Sequence record: MZ475892.1
DNA: 64,000 nt
Reading direction: 5' to 3' (one strand)
The first letter of the stretch is position 1; every line of letters starts with the position of its first letter. Below, piece after piece: positions 23,336 through 34,074 of the stretch. The position numbers and the translations under genes were made by a program. Under the pieces are notes generated by a model. That model ran no database searches and was not told where the DNA came from. It saw only the letters and a list, made by a program, of their open reading frames with translations.

Positions 23336-23720
23336 TCAGTTACGTGATCAATTGACCGAAGCTGAATACGCAGAACTTGAGCGCACGACAGCACGGTCAA
23401 TCATGGAACAAGTGTGGGCACTACGCGGCTGGACGGTTAAGCTCGACTGGTGCAACTATATGTGCGACGACGTTGATTGGTTATTCCATGGTAATGAACG
23501 TAAAGCACCGGTTGATCACGCTATGCCGAATTCTGGTGTTGGCACTAGCATTGAGCAGCATCGCCTTAATGTCGTGTTTACTCCTACTGAGGTTAGCGTT
23601 ACGAACTCACTGGTAGACAGCCCTGTCACGGGCACTGGTATGTCACTGCGCTGTGCTTACTGCGCGTGGCTTTTAGCAATCGAAAAACAAAAGGCTGCCA
23701 ATGCGCTGCAATCTGACTGA
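23322..23720 (+). CDS. hypothetical protein
   Basis: 132 aa, start uncertain. Confidence 0.6.
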   Translation: MSSVNQLRDQLTEAEYAELERTTARSIMEQVWALRGWTVKLDWCNYMCDDVDWLFHGNERKAPVDHAMPNSGVGTSIEQHRLNVVFTPTEVSVTNSLVDSPVTGTGMSLRCAYCAWLLAIEKQKAANALQSD

Positions 23721-24216
23721 ACTGCCTATCAAACTCGATCAGGCTGAAAACATTATGGGCAGCGTGTTTGCGCTTGCTGCTGGCTCTAAGTCCAAACGCC
23801 GTGCTACTGCTGCAATGCTCATCCATTTCCATGAAGGCTACCCTACGATCATCAGTAGTGGTGTCAATGGTACTGTGCCTGGTGAAAGCAACGTGTGTGA
23901 GAATGAAGACCTCACTCTGACGTTTGCTCACGTCACCCACGCAGAAGCTAACTGCCTCAATCGCATGGACGAATACAGTCTGTGGCCAGAAGAAGAGGAC
24001 ATCCTGTTTTGTACTGACAGCCCCTGTCCTGATTGTTTGCAGCAACTCGAATCTGCTGGTGTGCAGACCATCGTTTATGCGCGTGAATACAGACTCACAG
24101 AGCACCTGGATAAGTCTGCTATTCGCATGTATTGTCTCGATATTGAGAACGTGAGGGCGTCTTTGCTGAAATCTGTAAATCGTATAGACGAAGTGATTGC
24201 AACCACACCTACTTAA
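23701..24216 (+). CDS. dCMP deaminase
   Basis: SSGVNGT, HAEAN, TDSPCPDC Zn-binding motifs, IVYAREYR. Confidence 0.92.
   Translation: MRCNLTELPIKLDQAENIMGSVFALAAGSKSKRRATAAMLIHFHEGYPTIISSGVNGTVPGESNVCENEDLTLTFAHVTHAEANCLNRMDEYSLWPEEEDILFCTDSPCPDCLQQLESAGVQTIVYAREYRLTEHLDKSAIRMYCLDIENVRASLLKSVNRIDEVIATTPT
24173..24180 (+). promoter_or_regulatory. CTGTAAAT candidate phage promoter
   Basis: About 55 nt before ATG 24234. Confidence 0.55.
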
Positions 24217-24919: not shown

Positions 24920-25417
24920 ATGAGCGACATTAATCAATTACGCCGCAACTGGTTACAGTCTATGGACGTGCCTGAAGAGCTGGTGGACAAAGTATGCGGC
25001 ACTGACATTGAACAGCAAGATCTGTTTGAAAGTCTAAGCGCACAGCAACAACGCAAAGTAACGATCGGCCTTGCGCTGCTTCATCTGCAAGTGCCTGATG
25101 AAATTCGTTTCGATTTGCTCACCAATCATCTGGACGAGACTGAGCGTTTGGTCAAAGAGCAATTCGAAGAACTGGCAGCACGTCTCGTTAATCAAGTGAC
25201 GCAGACGGGTTCACCGGAGAAGCAATCAATGACAGGCGGTGTTCGTTTAGCAATGCTGATGAACATCCTTGGCTTTGATGATACTACGCTGCACGGTATC
25301 ATGTCAAACCCCAGCTTGATGCGTCAGGCGGGCCTTGTTGCTATGACTGGCCTTCAAGATATGGGACAGAAAATACAGCAACTTTACGACGGAAATAAAA
25401 GCAATGAGCCAAAATGA
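24920..25417 (+). CDS. hypothetical protein
   Basis: 165 aa, GAGGA RBS. Confidence 0.75.
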   Translation: MSDINQLRRNWLQSMDVPEELVDKVCGTDIEQQDLFESLSAQQQRKVTIGLALLHLQVPDEIRFDLLTNHLDETERLVKEQFEELAARLVNQVTQTGSPEKQSMTGGVRLAMLMNILGFDDTTLHGIMSNPSLMRQAGLVAMTGLQDMGQKIQQLYDGNKSNEPK

Positions 25418-25541
25418 ATTAGACGATTTCGACATTCCTGATCTGGACGAAGCCGAACAACGCGCAGAAGCTAAGCGTGATGGTGGTGGGGAAGTTGTCG
25501 AAGCATCTGATGAATGTGAAGGCGGCGCCTGCAAAATCTAA
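25404..25541 (+). CDS. 45-aa acidic peptide ending in RNR-alpha-like redox tail (CEGGACKI)
   Basis: Translated by hand: MSQNELDDFDIPDLDEAEQRAEAKRDGGGEVVEASDECEGGACKI; overlaps previous stop; absent from ORF track (under 60 aa). Confidence 0.75.
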   Translation: MSQNELDDFDIPDLDEAEQRAEAKRDGGGEVVEASDECEGGACKI

Positions 25542-25585
25542 TTCATGGGGCCTTGTGCCCCATTTCTGTTTCTCGGAGAGATGCT

Positions 25586-28138: not shown

Positions 28139-29239
28139 ATGACAGGTCCTCTCGATCTCACTAACCCACAGCACTTCGAACTGTACTCGCTGCACAGCGT
28201 TGATGCACAGTATATCAATCTGTGTGACGCACTCCTCACTCAGGGTACGCACGAATCTGACCCAGAGCGCACTACTGATACGTGGCATACGCTGATCGGT
28301 ATTGGCTTCCAGTTGTCTAACACCAACATCGCTTTCCCTGCGCTGCTGTCTAAGCGTGTCAACGTCCGTGCAGCTATCGATGAATCATGCTGGTTCGCAC
28401 GCGGTGAAACGAACATCGCAACTCTCGGTTCTAAAATCTGGAACGAGTGGGCAGACGAAGAAGGTGAGAACGGTCCTATCTACGGCTTCCAGTATCGAAA
28501 CTGGCCTGACATTAAAGTGTTCAACACTGTCGAAGGTATGATTGAGCAGCACATCCCACCAGCAATGATTGAGCGCATCTCGAAAGAGATCAACCGCATG
28601 AAGGCGCAGGGCTATATCGAAACTGCGTTGCCTGATGGTCGCGTGCTGTATGAAGGCTATATCGATCAGTACGCTGATGCACTACGTCAAATCATGGCGC
28701 GTAGTCGTAGCCGCCGCATTCGTGTGCAAGCGTTCAACCCTGGTTACGTTGGTATGCAGAGCCTGCCTCCGTGTCACACTGAGTTTGAGTTCAACGTGAC
28801 CAAAGCTACTGCGTATGAAATTGCGCAGATGGAAGCACGCTCAATGCGCCCTGACGCTGACTCACTGCATATCGTGGTGACCATGCGCTCAAACGACGCG
28901 CTCTTGGGCAGGCCATTCAACATCGTTGGCTACAGCGCCATGCACCAGTTGTTTGCGAAGTGGGCGGGTCTGAACGTTGGTTCGTTTACTCTGAATGTGA
29001 CCAATATGCACATGTACGATCACCACCGCGAAGCGTATGCACAACAGCGTGAGCAGTGGCTGGAACTACAGACGCAGATGCAGACGACAGGCAAACCTGT
29101 TGTTTACCCTACCCTCGAAATCACTGACGACATTCTGGGCCTGACGCCAGAAGAGCTGCTGGATAACGTCAACGTCGATTGGTTCGAGCTGGTGGACTAC
29201 TCTCCTAAACCTGCTGTTAAAGGACGCGTAACCAAATGA
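28139..29239 (+). CDS. thyA: thymidylate synthase
   Basis: GPIYGFQYRNW, SRR, LPPCH, MRSNDALLGRPFN (Asn, dUMP-type), HMYDHH. Confidence 0.93.
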   Translation: MTGPLDLTNPQHFELYSLHSVDAQYINLCDALLTQGTHESDPERTTDTWHTLIGIGFQLSNTNIAFPALLSKRVNVRAAIDESCWFARGETNIATLGSKIWNEWADEEGENGPIYGFQYRNWPDIKVFNTVEGMIEQHIPPAMIERISKEINRMKAQGYIETALPDGRVLYEGYIDQYADALRQIMARSRSRRIRVQAFNPGYVGMQSLPPCHTEFEFNVTKATAYEIAQMEARSMRPDADSLHIVVTMRSNDALLGRPFNIVGYSAMHQLFAKWAGLNVGSFTLNVTNMHMYDHHREAYAQQREQWLELQTQMQTTGKPVVYPTLEITDDILGLTPEELLDNVNVDWFELVDYSPKPAVKGRVTK

Positions 29240-31238: not shown

Positions 31239-31937
31239 ATGGCAAAAATTGCTAAAGCAAAGGAAGGGAAAAAGAAAAGCAACCCTATGTTGATTGACCT
31301 GAAAAAGTTCAAGTCAGTTAAACAGCTTAAGGGTGCGAAGTACAACCCTCGTTTCATTACAGACAGCCGACTGAGAGCGCTCGAAGGTTCTTTGGGCAGC
31401 TTCGGTGATTTGTCTGGCGTGGTGTTCAACAACAGCGTAGACAGTGGCGTATTGATCTCAGGCCACCAGCGTCTCAAGTCGATTGAGAAGTGGGACTCGC
31501 GCATTGAGATTCAACAAACGTCTGACAAGTACGGCACGGTAGCGTTGGGTTATATCCATGCTACCAGCGCCAAAGGTAAAACGATCAGCATCCCACTGCG
31601 TATCGTTAACTGGTCAGATAAGAAAGTGGAGTTTGCTGCTAACATTGCTGCGAATGCCCACGGCGGTGAGTTCGATAACAAAAAGCTCGCGTCTCTTGTT
31701 GAGAAGCTGGACCTGACTACAATCAAGCCAGCTCTTATCGGGCTTGACCCGTTAGAGATTCGCGGCCTGCAACAGACGCTGAGCAAACAAGCTATCGTCG
31801 AGCAGGAAAAGCGTGTTGGTAAAACAACAGGCAAAATGAACGGCAGTACTGGCGAGTTCAAAGAGTACACGACTGATGAAGTTGGTACTGCGCTGACCTG
31901 CACCTGCCCACGTTGTGGCTTTAAGTTCGAGGGATAA
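31239..31937 (+). CDS. ParB/Srx-like nuclease domain protein with C-terminal Zn ribbon
   Basis: YNPRFI...GSFG...LISGHQRL; CPRCG at C-terminus. Confidence 0.8.
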   Translation: MAKIAKAKEGKKKSNPMLIDLKKFKSVKQLKGAKYNPRFITDSRLRALEGSLGSFGDLSGVVFNNSVDSGVLISGHQRLKSIEKWDSRIEIQQTSDKYGTVALGYIHATSAKGKTISIPLRIVNWSDKKVEFAANIAANAHGGEFDNKKLASLVEKLDLTTIKPALIGLDPLEIRGLQQTLSKQAIVEQEKRVGKTTGKMNGSTGEFKEYTTDEVGTALTCTCPRCGFKFEG

Positions 31938-31938
31938 C

Positions 31939-34074
31939 ATGATCATCAAGCCGCCTACAATGAAAGAGATTAATAAGCTGCCCAAGCCTTGGTCAGGTAT
32001 GAGTTTCTTTGCAGGTTGCGGTGGTTCATCTACCGGTCACAAGATGGCCGGTATTAACATCCTACTGAGCAACGAGTTCGTGGACGCGGCTCGTGAATCG
32101 TATGAAGCGAACCATCCAACAACCAAAGTGTTGCCCCACGATATTCGTCGTCTTGACCCGAAAAAGCTGCTTAGCTATTGCGGCCTGAGTCAGGGCGAAC
32201 TGGACTTGCTCGACGGCAGTCCTCCGTGCTTCACCGAAGACACGTTCATTCATACCGACACTGGTATGAAGTTCATCACTGATATGCGCATCGGTGACTT
32301 CGCTATGACCTCTGTTGGTAAGTATCATCCAGTGTATGACACGATGGTACGTCCGTATGACGGTCAGATGCACAGAATTGAAACGCTGCTTGGTCAGAAC
32401 AATGCAACGCCTGAACATCCGTTCTTTGTTCGTCGTCAGAATGAAGAAACTGGCGGGTACAGTGAGCCGTTCTGGTGTGACGCTAAAGATGTGCAGGAAG
32501 GTGACCTGTTAGGTACGCCTCGTGTTACGCCTGATATGGGCGAAGCACACACGCATGAGATTATCTCGTCGTTGACTGCGCAGCTTGTGCGTTGGATTGC
32601 ATTGCCTGAGTTCTGGTGGCTGATTGGTCACTGGTGCAATCGCGGTGCAATCGATAAGATTCGTGGTGTCGATGTTATTCAATTCACCTCGATGACAGCG
32701 ATGGAAAACTCGCTGGTGGAACAAGCGTTCGACGTGCTCAAGTTAAGCAGCATCAACAGCGCTTCGTCCGACATGGGCGTTCATCGTAAGACCGTTCGTG
32801 TTGTTATGGACACAGACCTGTTGCTGTTCTTGCGTATGTTTATCGCGCAGGGCAAGAAGTCTATGTCCCGCCGTCTGCCTGGCATGATCTTCCATCTGGC
32901 TAAAGAGCTGAAACAGCAATTCATTCTCGGCTATCTGGGTCGTGATTACGTCACAGCAATGGGCGTTGGTCATGCGTTAGAGGCTGACTCAAAGCGCTTC
33001 CTAGTTGAGATGAATTACCTGTGCTGCTCTGCGTTCAACAGACCGCTGTTCGATGCAATGTTGTTCACTGACTTGCATTACGGTAGTCCGATGTTACCAC
33101 CGAGTCGCTTCATTACCAAAGAGCACATCGGCTTCCTGTTCTTGCAAGAAGAGGTTAATTTCTTCTTTGAGTTCGAGCCGGAAGACCCGCATCTGTGGGT
33201 TGAAGTGATTGAGAACTTTACGCATCATGAAACGTGCAACGTCTATAACTTCTCAGTCAGTGTTGATGAGACGTATGTTGCTAACGGCATGGTCGTGCAT
33301 AACTGCAAAGGGTTCTCGACTGCTGGCGTGAAAGAAGACGGCTGGGGCAAAGAGGTTAAGTACAGCGGCAACAAGTATCAGCAAGTCGATGACCTGTTCG
33401 ATCAGTATTGCCGTATGCTCAAGCACATGCAGCCTAAAACGTTCACTGCGGAAAACGTTAGTGGCCTCGTTAAAGGTGCGTCGAAGGGTTACTTCATTGA
33501 AATCATGAAGACCTTTGATCAGCTGGGCTACTATGTGCGAGCGCCGTTGCTTAATGCTGCGTGGCTTGGTGTGCCTCAGTCTCGTGAGCGTATCATCTTT
33601 ATGGGTGTGCGCAAAGACGTGGCGAAAGCACTCGGCTATAAAACTGCGTTGACTGCTGTGCCTGATGTAACACCTCAATCAAGCATGGCGTTCCTTGCAG
33701 ATGCATTGCCGAACATTCGTCGTTATAAAGGTACGGAGCGTGACATTATCAAGTATCTGCCTGCTGTTAACGGCCCGATGCCTACGATTACCGCTGCTGA
33801 TGCTATCGCATACGAAACAGCACGCTTCTCCTCTGCTGGCTTCATTGAAGACGACAAAGGGCACAGACGCAAGCTGACGATTGACGAACTCAAAGTTGTG
33901 TCAGGCATGCCTAGTGATTACGTGCTCACAGGTAAGTTTGAAGAACAATGGGAACGTCTCGGTCGTGTGTGCGTACCTGCAATGACGTGTGCTGCGGCAA
34001 GCGCGTTGATACGCCATGTGCTTGAGCCTTACGCGAAGCTGCGTAAAAAGAAACCTGGGGATCGTTTTCGTTAA
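31939..34074 (+). CDS. C5-cytosine methyltransferase family enzyme with intein; probable carboxymethyltransferase
   Basis: FFAGCGG (I), DIRRL, GSPP|C (IV), ENVSG (VI), QSRER (VIII), RKLTIDE (IX), ERLGRVCVP (X with Arg for Asn); GAGGGA RBS. Confidence 0.9.
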   Translation: MIIKPPTMKEINKLPKPWSGMSFFAGCGGSSTGHKMAGINILLSNEFVDAARESYEANHPTTKVLPHDIRRLDPKKLLSYCGLSQGELDLLDGSPPCFTEDTFIHTDTGMKFITDMRIGDFAMTSVGKYHPVYDTMVRPYDGQMHRIETLLGQNNATPEHPFFVRRQNEETGGYSEPFWCDAKDVQEGDLLGTPRVTPDMGEAHTHEIISSLTAQLVRWIALPEFWWLIGHWCNRGAIDKIRGVDVIQFTSMTAMENSLVEQAFDVLKLSSINSASSDMGVHRKTVRVVMDTDLLLFLRMFIAQGKKSMSRRLPGMIFHLAKELKQQFILGYLGRDYVTAMGVGHALEADSKRFLVEMNYLCCSAFNRPLFDAMLFTDLHYGSPMLPPSRFITKEHIGFLFLQEEVNFFFEFEPEDPHLWVEVIENFTHHETCNVYNFSVSVDETYVANGMVVHNCKGFSTAGVKEDGWGKEVKYSGNKYQQVDDLFDQYCRMLKHMQPKTFTAENVSGLVKGASKGYFIEIMKTFDQLGYYVRAPLLNAAWLGVPQSRERIIFMGVRKDVAKALGYKTALTAVPDVTPQSSMAFLADALPNIRRYKGTERDIIKYLPAVNGPMPTITAADAIAYETARFSSAGFIEDDKGHRRKLTIDELKVVSGMPSDYVLTGKFEEQWERLGRVCVPAMTCAAASALIRHVLEPYAKLRKKKPGDRFR
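32227..33303 (+). mobile_element. intein (359 aa) with degenerate LAGLIDADG region
   Basis: CFTEDT start, ATPEHPF block B, VVHN end, Cys +1 is the catalytic Cys; LIGHWCNRG and FILGYLGRD remnants. Confidence 0.92.

What the first reader, a model, noticed from the sequence alone, without database searches (positions are those of the whole stretch)
25404..25541. Stand-alone 45-aa peptide ending in the ribonucleotide reductase redox tail
Seen: small ORF missed by the track, acidic, ending DECEGGACKI-stop. Established: E. coli NrdA ends in ...DGCESGACKI, and its two Cys shuttle electrons from thioredoxin/glutaredoxin to the active site. Inference: a free shuttle peptide acting in trans on host or phage RNR, a redoxin decoy or inhibitor, or a remnant of an nrdA gene. 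It lies between dCMP deaminase and thyA in a nucleotide-metabolism region.
Basis: partly seen in the sequence, partly recalled or inferred. Interest (0 to 1): 0.8.

Follow-up and report, generated by a model that had tools for sequence, protein, structure and literature searches.

The report
Free-standing copy of the RNR redox tail
A giant Erwinia phage with no ribonucleotide reductase of its own encodes a 45-residue acidic peptide whose end copies the mobile cysteine tail of the bacterial enzyme, and the same undescribed mini-protein recurs in many jumbo phages and some bacteria, so it probably taps into the host's DNA-precursor supply.

Summary
Window 25404-25541 (+) is a 45-aa ORF with net charge about -11. 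Its last ~21 residues are homologous to the C-terminal redox tail of class Ia RNR alpha (NrdA). A family profile hits the exact C-terminus of E. coli NrdA at E 0.002-0.005.

It was not missed by annotation. GenBank lists it as a hypothetical CDS of Erwinia phage pEa_SNUABM_34.

It is not an nrdA remnant:
- It belongs to a family of 95 clusters (50% identity) among 1.84 billion proteins.
- Members occur in several jumbo-phage lineages and in chromosomes of Eikenella, Moraxella, Neisseria and Paenalcaligenes.
- Both cysteines are present in all 120 members examined.
- A second conserved acidic/hydrophobic motif lies at the N-terminus.
- The nucleotide differences seen are synonymous only.

No NrdA was found in three peptide-bearing phage lineages. 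Serratia phage PCH45 carries a host-like NrdB but no NrdA.

My best reading, which is inferred and not shown, is a trans-acting tail. Host thioredoxin or glutaredoxin would reduce it, and it would pass electrons to host NrdA. The main rival is a decoy or inhibitor.

I found no literature and no curated family for it. The phiR1-37 homologue is barely transcribed, which argues for caution.

The parts
25404..25541 (+). ORF for the 45-aa acidic peptide, stop codon included (GenBank CDS pEaSNUABM34_00040)
   Evidence: It is 100% identical in protein in 9 Snuvirus genomes. The 3 nucleotide differences from pEa_SNUABM_7 are all synonymous third positions.
25419..25448 (+). N-terminal acidic/hydrophobic motif (residues 6-15, LDDFDIPDLD), the second conserved element of the family
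   Evidence: Column shares in the 79-member alignment A3: residue 7 is Asp in 84%; residue 9 is hydrophobic in 97% (Phe in 69%); residue 10 is acidic in 74%; residue 14 is hydrophobic in 80%. Its binding partner is unknown.
25443..25481 (+). Central predicted helix (residues 14-26); the rest of the peptide is predicted disordered
   Evidence: AlphaFold2 on A3: mean pLDDT 65, one helix at residues 14-26.
25476..25538 (+). Module homologous to the NrdA C-terminal tail (residues 25-45). The Cys pair is C38 (25515-25517) and C43 (25530-25532), spaced C-x4-C, and the peptide ends CKI.
   Evidence: C38 and C43 are present in 100% of A3 columns. All 120 listed members have two Cys in the last 12 residues.
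25545..25573 (+). Terminator-like GC hairpin plus a T-rich run, starting three bases after the stop codon
   Evidence: -14.6 kcal/mol, z -2.5. Similar hairpins or annotated terminators follow the homologues in Miami, phiR1-37, L009, L018 and L021.
24920..25417 (+). Upstream 165-aa ORF of unknown function that overlaps the peptide start by 14 nt, an arrangement compatible with translational coupling. It is lineage-specific and not a universal partner.
   Evidence: It is found only in 46 Snuvirus, Alexandravirus and Y3-like records. It has no detectable homology to the upstream genes in Miami, PCH45 or L017.
23701..24216 (+). dCMP deaminase (context)
   Evidence: Pfam PF00383, E 1.1e-9.
28139..29239 (+). 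Thymidylate-synthase homologue of 366 aa, which is long for the family (context)
   Evidence: Pfam PF00303, E 2.4e-56.

Best explanation
The ORF encodes a real, mostly disordered, strongly acidic mini-protein with two functional ends.

Its last ~21 residues are a homologue of the flexible C-terminal tail of the class Ia ribonucleotide reductase alpha subunit (NrdA). In NrdA, the two tail cysteines re-reduce the active-site disulfide after each turnover. Thioredoxin or glutaredoxin then re-reduces the tail. The peptide's N-terminal acidic/hydrophobic motif is a second, separate docking element whose partner is unknown.

No RNR, thioredoxin or glutaredoxin was detected in this phage lineage, so the partners must be host proteins.

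The mechanism I commit to is this. Host Trx/Grx keep the free peptide reduced. The peptide enters the active site of host NrdA in trans and hands over electrons. That adds to, or bypasses, the enzyme's own tail and so sustains host dNDP synthesis for a 264-kb genome.

What is shown: the homology, the conservation, the two invariant Cys, the non-detection of phage NrdA, and the recurrent nucleotide-metabolism neighbourhood.

What is inferred: that the peptide is made, that redoxins reduce it, that it reaches NrdA, and that the net effect is stimulation.
For: 1. Tail homology is anchored at both C-termini. Profile A3 against the PDB gives E. coli NrdA 739-761 at E 0.002-0.005. It also hits the NrdA 25-mer that was solved bound to glutaredoxin, 1QFN_B. 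The likeness extends to RDG...EVVE.S.D.CEGGACKI in Morganellaceae NrdA.

2. All 120 listed members have two Cys in the last 12 residues. The spacing is C-x4-C in 114, C-x3-C in 5 and C-x2-C in 1. The pair is kept even where the spacing changes, which points to dithiol/disulfide chemistry more than to shape alone.

3. Purifying selection. There are only synonymous changes against pEa_SNUABM_7. The last 21 residues are identical to Klebsiella phage Miami despite 6 synonymous differences.

4. No NrdA was found in three peptide-bearing lineages: Snuvirus (plus no RNR Pfam domain in 10 large unannotated ORFs), PCH45 and phiKp_32. No Trx/Grx was found either.

5. PCH45 encodes an NrdB 81% identical to Xenorhabdus NrdB, but no NrdA. 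That phage already supplies one partner of host NrdA, which fits a boosting role better than an inhibiting one.

6. In Moraxella bovoculi the homologue lies 70 nt upstream of a thioredoxin gene on the same strand.

7. Pyrimidine-dNTP genes recur nearby in different phage lineages: dCMP deaminase and ThyA (window; L043), ThyA at 1.3 kb (L044), and thymidine kinase (L017, L042).

8. The AF2 model is a disordered peptide with one helix, as expected of a mobile tail.

The tail's role in RNR is established knowledge: see the abstracts of PMC4078304 and PMC5704485.
Against: - There is no functional or expression evidence for this phage.
- The phiR1-37 homologue g117 gave RNA-seq values of 3.9, 1.5 and 1.2, against hundreds to tens of thousands for most neighbouring genes (PMC4848604 supplementary table).
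- Host NrdA already has its own tail in cis, so the benefit of a free tail is not obvious.
- The N-terminal motif has no identified partner. No NrdB-like or other hit was obtained for it.
- Bacterial copies sit in varied contexts that are not RNR-linked: between iscS and iscU in Eikenella, and next to LysR and an autotransporter in Paenalcaligenes.
- About 12 relatives carry the whole module at the C-terminus of unrelated, unidentified domains. The module may therefore serve other enzymes.
- Peptide tails do not track the host's own variant. Klebsiella NrdA has CESGACKI while Klebsiella phages have CEGGACKI.
- The all-two-Cys count comes from hits seeded partly on the motif itself.
Confidence: 0.4

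Rival explanations
1. Decoy or inhibitor. The free tail competes with NrdA's own tail for the active site or for Trx/Grx, and the N-terminal motif perhaps occupies another site on NrdA. It would thereby throttle or re-tune host RNR or the host thiol-redox system. Functionally it would be a bacterial and phage counterpart of the fungal Sml1-type small disordered RNR inhibitors.
For: The homology evidence is the same as for the main explanation. The peptide is small, acidic and disordered. Bacteria whose relatives have a tailed NrdA also keep a free copy (Paenalcaligenes). A regulator would make more sense there than a redundant shuttle. The precedent is my own knowledge of Zhang et al. 2007 PNAS, listed as reference 16 of PMC4078304. 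That paper could not be read here. As I recall it, Sml1 competes with the R1 C-terminal tail.
Against: These phages depend on host NrdA, and PCH45 even adds an NrdB, so inhibiting the enzyme looks self-defeating. A pure competitor would not need both Cys in every member examined. The gene is adjacent to a thioredoxin gene on the same strand in Moraxella bovoculi, which suggests cooperation. There is no sequence relation to Sml1, and Pfam finds nothing.
Confidence: 0.25
2. Portable redox or recruitment module aimed at something other than NrdA. The tail, free or fused, would draw electrons from Trx/Grx for other enzymes, or would carry sulfur or a metal. The resemblance to NrdA would then reflect a shared redoxin partner only.
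For: The whole module occurs at the exact C-terminus of at least three unrelated kinds of protein. These are two families of unknown fold, and one protein with a cpYpsA SLOG nucleotide-binding domain. The Eikenella copy lies between iscS and iscU. There are weak profile hits to the Cys loop of FeoC (E about 0.5).
Against: The last eight residues are kept almost letter for letter as in NrdA. In A3 the shares are Glu 85%, Gly 80%, Gly 100%, Ala 89%, Lys 87% and Ile 94%. That is more than redoxin recognition alone is known to need. No conserved neighbouring enzyme was found. The FeoC hits are at chance level.
Confidence: 0.15
3. Non-functional leftover of a captured nrdA 3' end, or a spurious or unexpressed ORF.
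For: The phiR1-37 homologue has very low RNA-seq signal. The ORF is short, and no curated family exists for it.
Against: There are 95 clusters at 50% identity across phages and bacteria. Two separate motifs are conserved. Substitutions are synonymous only. No other nrdA fragment lies nearby. The start is conserved and a terminator-like hairpin follows the gene in several lineages.
Confidence: 0.05
4. Precursor of a ribosomally made, post-translationally modified peptide: an acidic leader followed by a Cys-containing core.
For: The size, the acidic N-terminal half and the C-terminal Cys pair resemble many such precursors. This is inference only.
Against: No modifying enzyme is conserved next to it, and its neighbours differ in every lineage. 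The core is homologous to a known protein tail.
Confidence: 0.03

Closest known systems
C-terminal redox tail of class Ia ribonucleotide reductase alpha (E. coli NrdA residues ~737-761; Cys754/Cys759)
   Same: About 20 residues are homologous. Both end in C-E-(S/G)-G-A-C-K-I at the very C-terminus, preceded by an acidic, flexible stretch. Both are presumably substrates of Trx/Grx, as the 25-mer of entry 1QFN is.
   Different: The phage tail is not attached to any catalytic barrel, ATP cone or other NrdA sequence. It carries an extra conserved N-terminal motif that NrdA lacks.
Sml1, Spd1, Dif1 and Hug1: small disordered RNR regulators of fungi
   Same: They are small, disordered proteins that act on the large RNR subunit. 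From my own knowledge, Sml1 interferes with tail-mediated regeneration of the active site.
   Different: There is no sequence relation (no Pfam hit). Those proteins are not copies of the tail and do not carry its Cys pair. They are eukaryotic.
Phages that encode only one RNR subunit (NrdB-only, e.g. PCH45; the phiEcoM-GJ1 group has annotated NrdB)
   Same: A phage contributes a single partner of host NrdA instead of a whole enzyme.
   Different: There the contribution is a complete, folded beta subunit. Here it is only a 45-aa tail. Whether the phiEcoM-GJ1 group lacks NrdA was not tested here.
Split nrdA genes of T4-like phages (Aeromonas phage Aeh1, split by a homing-endonuclease gene; my own knowledge)
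   Same: A piece of NrdA is encoded as a separate ORF.
   Different: There both halves are present and reassemble into one enzyme. Here no other NrdA part was found in the genome.

Membership tests
Class Ia RNR alpha subunit (NrdA) | Ten-stranded catalytic barrel (Pfam PF02867) with the active-site cysteines | tested here: not met
   The peptide has no Pfam hit. It is only 45 aa. tblastn shows no further NrdA-like sequence in the window or in the sister genome.
Class Ia RNR alpha subunit (NrdA) | C-terminal flexible tail with a redox Cys pair ending the protein | tested here: met
   End-anchored profile match to E. coli NrdA 739-761, E 0.002-0.005. Alignment to Xenorhabdus and other NrdA tails.
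Thioredoxin-fold redoxins (Trx, Grx, NrdH) | Thioredoxin fold with a CxxC active site | tested here: not met
   No Pfam or NCBIfam hit. The AF2 model is one helix plus disorder. The Cys spacing is C-x4-C.
Sml1-type RNR inhibitors | Sequence membership in the Sml1 family | tested here: not met
   No Pfam family of any kind matches the peptide or eight relatives.
Sml1-type RNR inhibitors | Binds the large subunit and blocks tail-mediated regeneration | not testable with these tools
   This needs binding or structural data. Only single-chain prediction was available here.
nrdA pseudogene or remnant | Flanking degraded NrdA sequence and relaxed selection | tested here: not met
   The tail is the only NrdA hit. 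Differences are synonymous only. The family is wide and conserved.
RiPP precursor peptide | Conserved adjacent modifying enzyme(s) | tested here: not met
   The neighbours differ in every lineage examined.
PHROG families 10239, 14561, 38753 and 24014 (phage proteins of unknown function) | Profile match | tested here: met
   E 5e-5 to 0.013, each aligned to the C-terminal end of the profile. These families carry no functional annotation.

The most novel reading that the evidence does not exclude
This is a portable 'redox tail in trans'. Jumbo phages that lack an RNR alpha subunit, and some beta- and gamma-proteobacteria, would encode a free or fused copy of the NrdA electron-shuttle tail joined to a separate docking motif. 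With it they would plug extra reducing capacity into the host's class Ia RNR, or regulate that enzyme. That would be a way of controlling dNTP supply that has not been described.
Probability: 0.3. Interest if true: 0.85.

Novelty: new variant of a known kind. Interest (0 to 1): 0.7.

Why it matters
RNR sets the dNTP supply, and phages are known to bring whole RNRs, single subunits or redoxins. A free-standing copy of only the enzyme's electron-shuttle tail was not found in the literature searched. Nor is it in Pfam, NCBIfam or PADLOC.

If it acts on host NrdA, it would show that the tail step of RNR turnover is a control point that viruses and bacteria exploit with a 45-residue protein. It would also give RNR enzymology a natural trans-acting tail to study. 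Finally, it would assign a role to four function-unknown PHROG families and to about 95 protein clusters.

Tried and rejected
- **Single-sequence searches.** The peptide, or its last 24 aa, against PDB sequences found no NrdA. Only family profiles recovered it.
- **E. coli DNA search.** Distant DNA search of the tail-coding region against E. coli genomes gave no match. This is not a recent copy of an E. coli nrdA end.
- **Conserved partner gene.** The upstream ORFs of the different lineages are unrelated.
- **N-terminal motif as an NrdB-tail mimic.** No NrdB hit came from either profile. One weak tblastn hit of the NrdB C-terminus elsewhere in the sister genome (E 0.22) was not recovered on re-run. 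I dropped the idea as unsupported; it is not disproved.
- **RNA element as the reason for the 66-nt stretch that is 91% identical to Klebsiella phages.** Rfam finds nothing, and the differences are synonymous. Protein-level selection explains it.
- **Identity of the fused N-terminal domains.** Pfam, PHROGs and PDB sequence searches gave nothing. An AF2 model of family F2 (pLDDT 62) gave no fold match (best E 0.2, TM below 0.3).
- **Defence-system libraries.** No hit.
- **Match between phage tail variant and host NrdA tail variant.** No strict match was seen.
- **Zhang et al. 2007 paper.** It is not held in the library.

Full report
**Source and observation.** The window is positions 1-64000 of Erwinia phage pEa_SNUABM_34 (MZ475892.1). 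This is a 264-kb jumbo phage; its 95%-identical sister pEa_SNUABM_7 is classified in the genus Snuvirus. The ORF at 25404-25541 (+) exists as described. It has an ATG start and a TAA stop, and it encodes 45 aa ending SDECEGGACKI, with 15 acidic and 4 basic residues. A dCMP deaminase (23701-24216) and a 366-aa thymidylate-synthase homologue (28139-29239) flank the region. The ORF overlaps the end of an upstream 165-aa ORF by 14 nt. A terminator-like hairpin follows it at 25545-25563.

**Is the tail likeness real?** The single peptide found nothing in the PDB sequence set, but family profiles did.
- The 11-member profile aligned its last 11 positions to residues 751-761 of E. coli NrdA, which is that protein's end (E 0.3).
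- The 79-member profile aligned positions 24-47 to NrdA 739-761 at E 0.002-0.005. It also hit two other class Ia alpha chains at their C-termini and the NrdA 25-mer of entry 1QFN.
- A scan of 185,579 bacterial genomes for the eight-residue end returned Xenorhabdus and Paenalcaligenes NrdA. Their tails match the peptide over 21-25 residues, starting at the RDG that ends the folded NrdA domain.
- Among 120 enterobacterial NrdA tails, the Morganellaceae type is the closest. It contains EEVVES.DSDCEGGACKI.

The peptide's C-terminal half is therefore a homologue of the NrdA tail, not a chance motif.

**It is a gene family, not a remnant.**
- tblastn found the ORF in 89 phage records. They include Snuvirus, Alexandravirus, Miamivirus, Maaswegvirus (FBKp24), PCH45, phiR1-37 (g117) and others.
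- A profile search of 5.8 billion proteins gave 164 clusters.
- A search of 1.84 billion representatives with no word seeding gave 95 clusters at E <= 0.001, most of them 42-64 aa.
- All 120 listed members have two Cys in the last 12 residues. The spacing is C-x4-C in 114, C-x3-C in 5 and C-x2-C in 1. In every case the second Cys is third from the end. Part of that set was seeded on the motif, which biases this count.
- In the 79-member alignment both Cys columns are 100%. The following Gly is 100% and the last Ile is 94%.
- A second element is conserved at the N-terminus. Residue 7 is Asp in 84%. Residue 9 is hydrophobic in 97%, and Phe in 69%. Acidic residues surround both.
- The three nucleotide differences from pEa_SNUABM_7 are synonymous. 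The last 21 residues are identical to Klebsiella phage Miami despite six synonymous changes. This explains the 91% nucleotide identity over 66 nt seen.
- Rfam finds no RNA family here.
- AF2 predicts one helix (residues 14-26) between disordered ends.

**Bacterial and fused relatives.** Free-standing homologues also sit in bacterial chromosomes, outside prophages.
- Eikenella corrodens: between iscS and iscU.
- Moraxella bovoculi: 70 nt upstream of a thioredoxin gene, on the same strand.
- Also M. nasibovis, Paenalcaligenes and a Neisseria MAG.

Paenalcaligenes and Oligella NrdA keep their own tails, so at least in that family the free gene is not a split-off tail. About twelve relatives of 115-360 aa carry the whole module at their exact C-terminus. 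Their N-terminal domains form two families of unknown fold, plus one protein with a cpYpsA SLOG domain.

**Does the phage have an RNR?** Three NrdA proteins and one NrdB, searched by tblastn against the window and the full genome of pEa_SNUABM_7, hit only the peptide. Ten large unannotated ORFs have no RNR domain. No thioredoxin or glutaredoxin was found.

The same test was run on two other peptide-bearing lineages. Klebsiella phage phiKp_32, which is Miami-like, has neither NrdA nor NrdB in the 250,000 of 251,460 bp searched. Serratia phage PCH45 has an NrdB 81% identical to Xenorhabdus NrdB but no NrdA.

The idea of a tail for a tail-less phage NrdA is thus rejected, and the partners must be host proteins. 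Pyrimidine-dNTP genes recur near the gene in different lineages. No neighbouring gene is universally conserved.

**Mechanism.** It is established that the NrdA tail shuttles electrons from Trx/Grx to the active-site disulfide (abstracts of PMC4078304 and PMC5704485). From the anatomy, I infer that the peptide uses the same two partners in the host.

I favour a trans-acting shuttle that supports host NrdA turnover (confidence 0.4), for three reasons. The Cys pair is kept even where the spacing changes. PCH45 also donates an NrdB to a host NrdA. One bacterial copy lies next to a thioredoxin gene.

The main rival is a decoy or inhibitor analogous to fungal Sml1 (0.25). It would better explain the bacterial copies that sit beside a tailed NrdA. 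A module serving other enzymes (0.15) is suggested by the fusions and by the isc context.

Evidence against any strong claim:
- There are no functional data.
- The phiR1-37 homologue g117 is barely transcribed. Its values were 3.9, 1.5 and 1.2, against hundreds to tens of thousands for most neighbours.
- The partner of the N-terminal motif is unknown.
- The tail variant does not track the host's own variant.

**Novelty.** Six literature searches and the jumbo-phage reviews I read mention nothing like it. Pfam, NCBIfam and PADLOC have no model. Four PHROG families of unknown function match. I rate it a new variant of a known kind. The known kinds are a phage or bacterial mini-protein that mimics part of a host enzyme, and small disordered RNR regulators.

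**Limits.**
- Absence of NrdA was tested in three lineages only.
- For the Snuvirus, the genome beyond 64 kb was read from the sister phage pEa_SNUABM_7.
- For class II/III RNRs, the only test was a Pfam scan of ten large ORFs of the sister Snuvirus genome.
- NrdA of Eikenella, Moraxella and Neisseria could not be fetched.
- No multi-chain structure prediction was available.

That negative result should be treated as weak. It is backed by tblastn with a thioredoxin fetched by a tool.

Noticed in passing
window 31915-34074 (+): A ~711-719-aa ORF is a C-5 cytosine DNA methylase interrupted by an intein (Intein_splicing and Hint domains between the methylase parts). This was seen in the sister-phage copy L004:31891-34023. 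A related metagenomic contig (L043) has the same arrangement.
   Followed up: partly
window 28139-29239 (+): The thymidylate-synthase homologue is 366 aa, against a 266-position Pfam profile. It therefore carries about 75-100 extra residues. It may be a variant enzyme, such as a pyrimidine hydroxymethylase. I did not examine it.
   Followed up: no
L048:24783-25886 (Serratia phage PCH45, NC_091964.1 124783-125889): PCH45 encodes a class Ia NrdB 81% identical to Xenorhabdus NrdB, but no NrdA was found anywhere in its 212.8-kb genome. It is a beta-only phage that must pair with host alpha.
   Followed up: yes
L017:2608-3102 (IMG/VR contig of 273 kb); proteins P0241, P0246, P0250, P0251 and P0242, P0244, P0248, P0285: The whole peptide module is fused to the C-terminus of two unrelated families of proteins of unknown fold. 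In one further protein (P0258) it is fused to a cpYpsA SLOG domain.
   Followed up: partly
L029:5001-5147 (Eikenella corrodens); L040:6001-6270 (Moraxella bovoculi): Chromosomal homologues lie between iscS and iscU in Eikenella, and directly upstream of a thioredoxin gene in Moraxella bovoculi.
   Followed up: partly
window 25476-25541 versus Klebsiella phage Miami (L002:4001-4066): A 66-nt stretch is 91% identical between otherwise unalignable Erwinia and Klebsiella jumbo phages. It is explained by identical protein sequence with six synonymous differences.
   Followed up: yes
L008:2456-2611 (Yersinia phage phiR1-37, gene g117): The homologue has near-zero RNA-seq values in the published infection time course, while the next gene, g118, is among the highest.
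   Followed up: partly
phage records listed (e.g. Escherichia phage phiEcoM-GJ1, about 52 kb): Many small coliphages carry a host-like NrdB (about 74% identical to that of PCH45) next to their endolysin gene. I did not check whether they lack NrdA.
   Followed up: no
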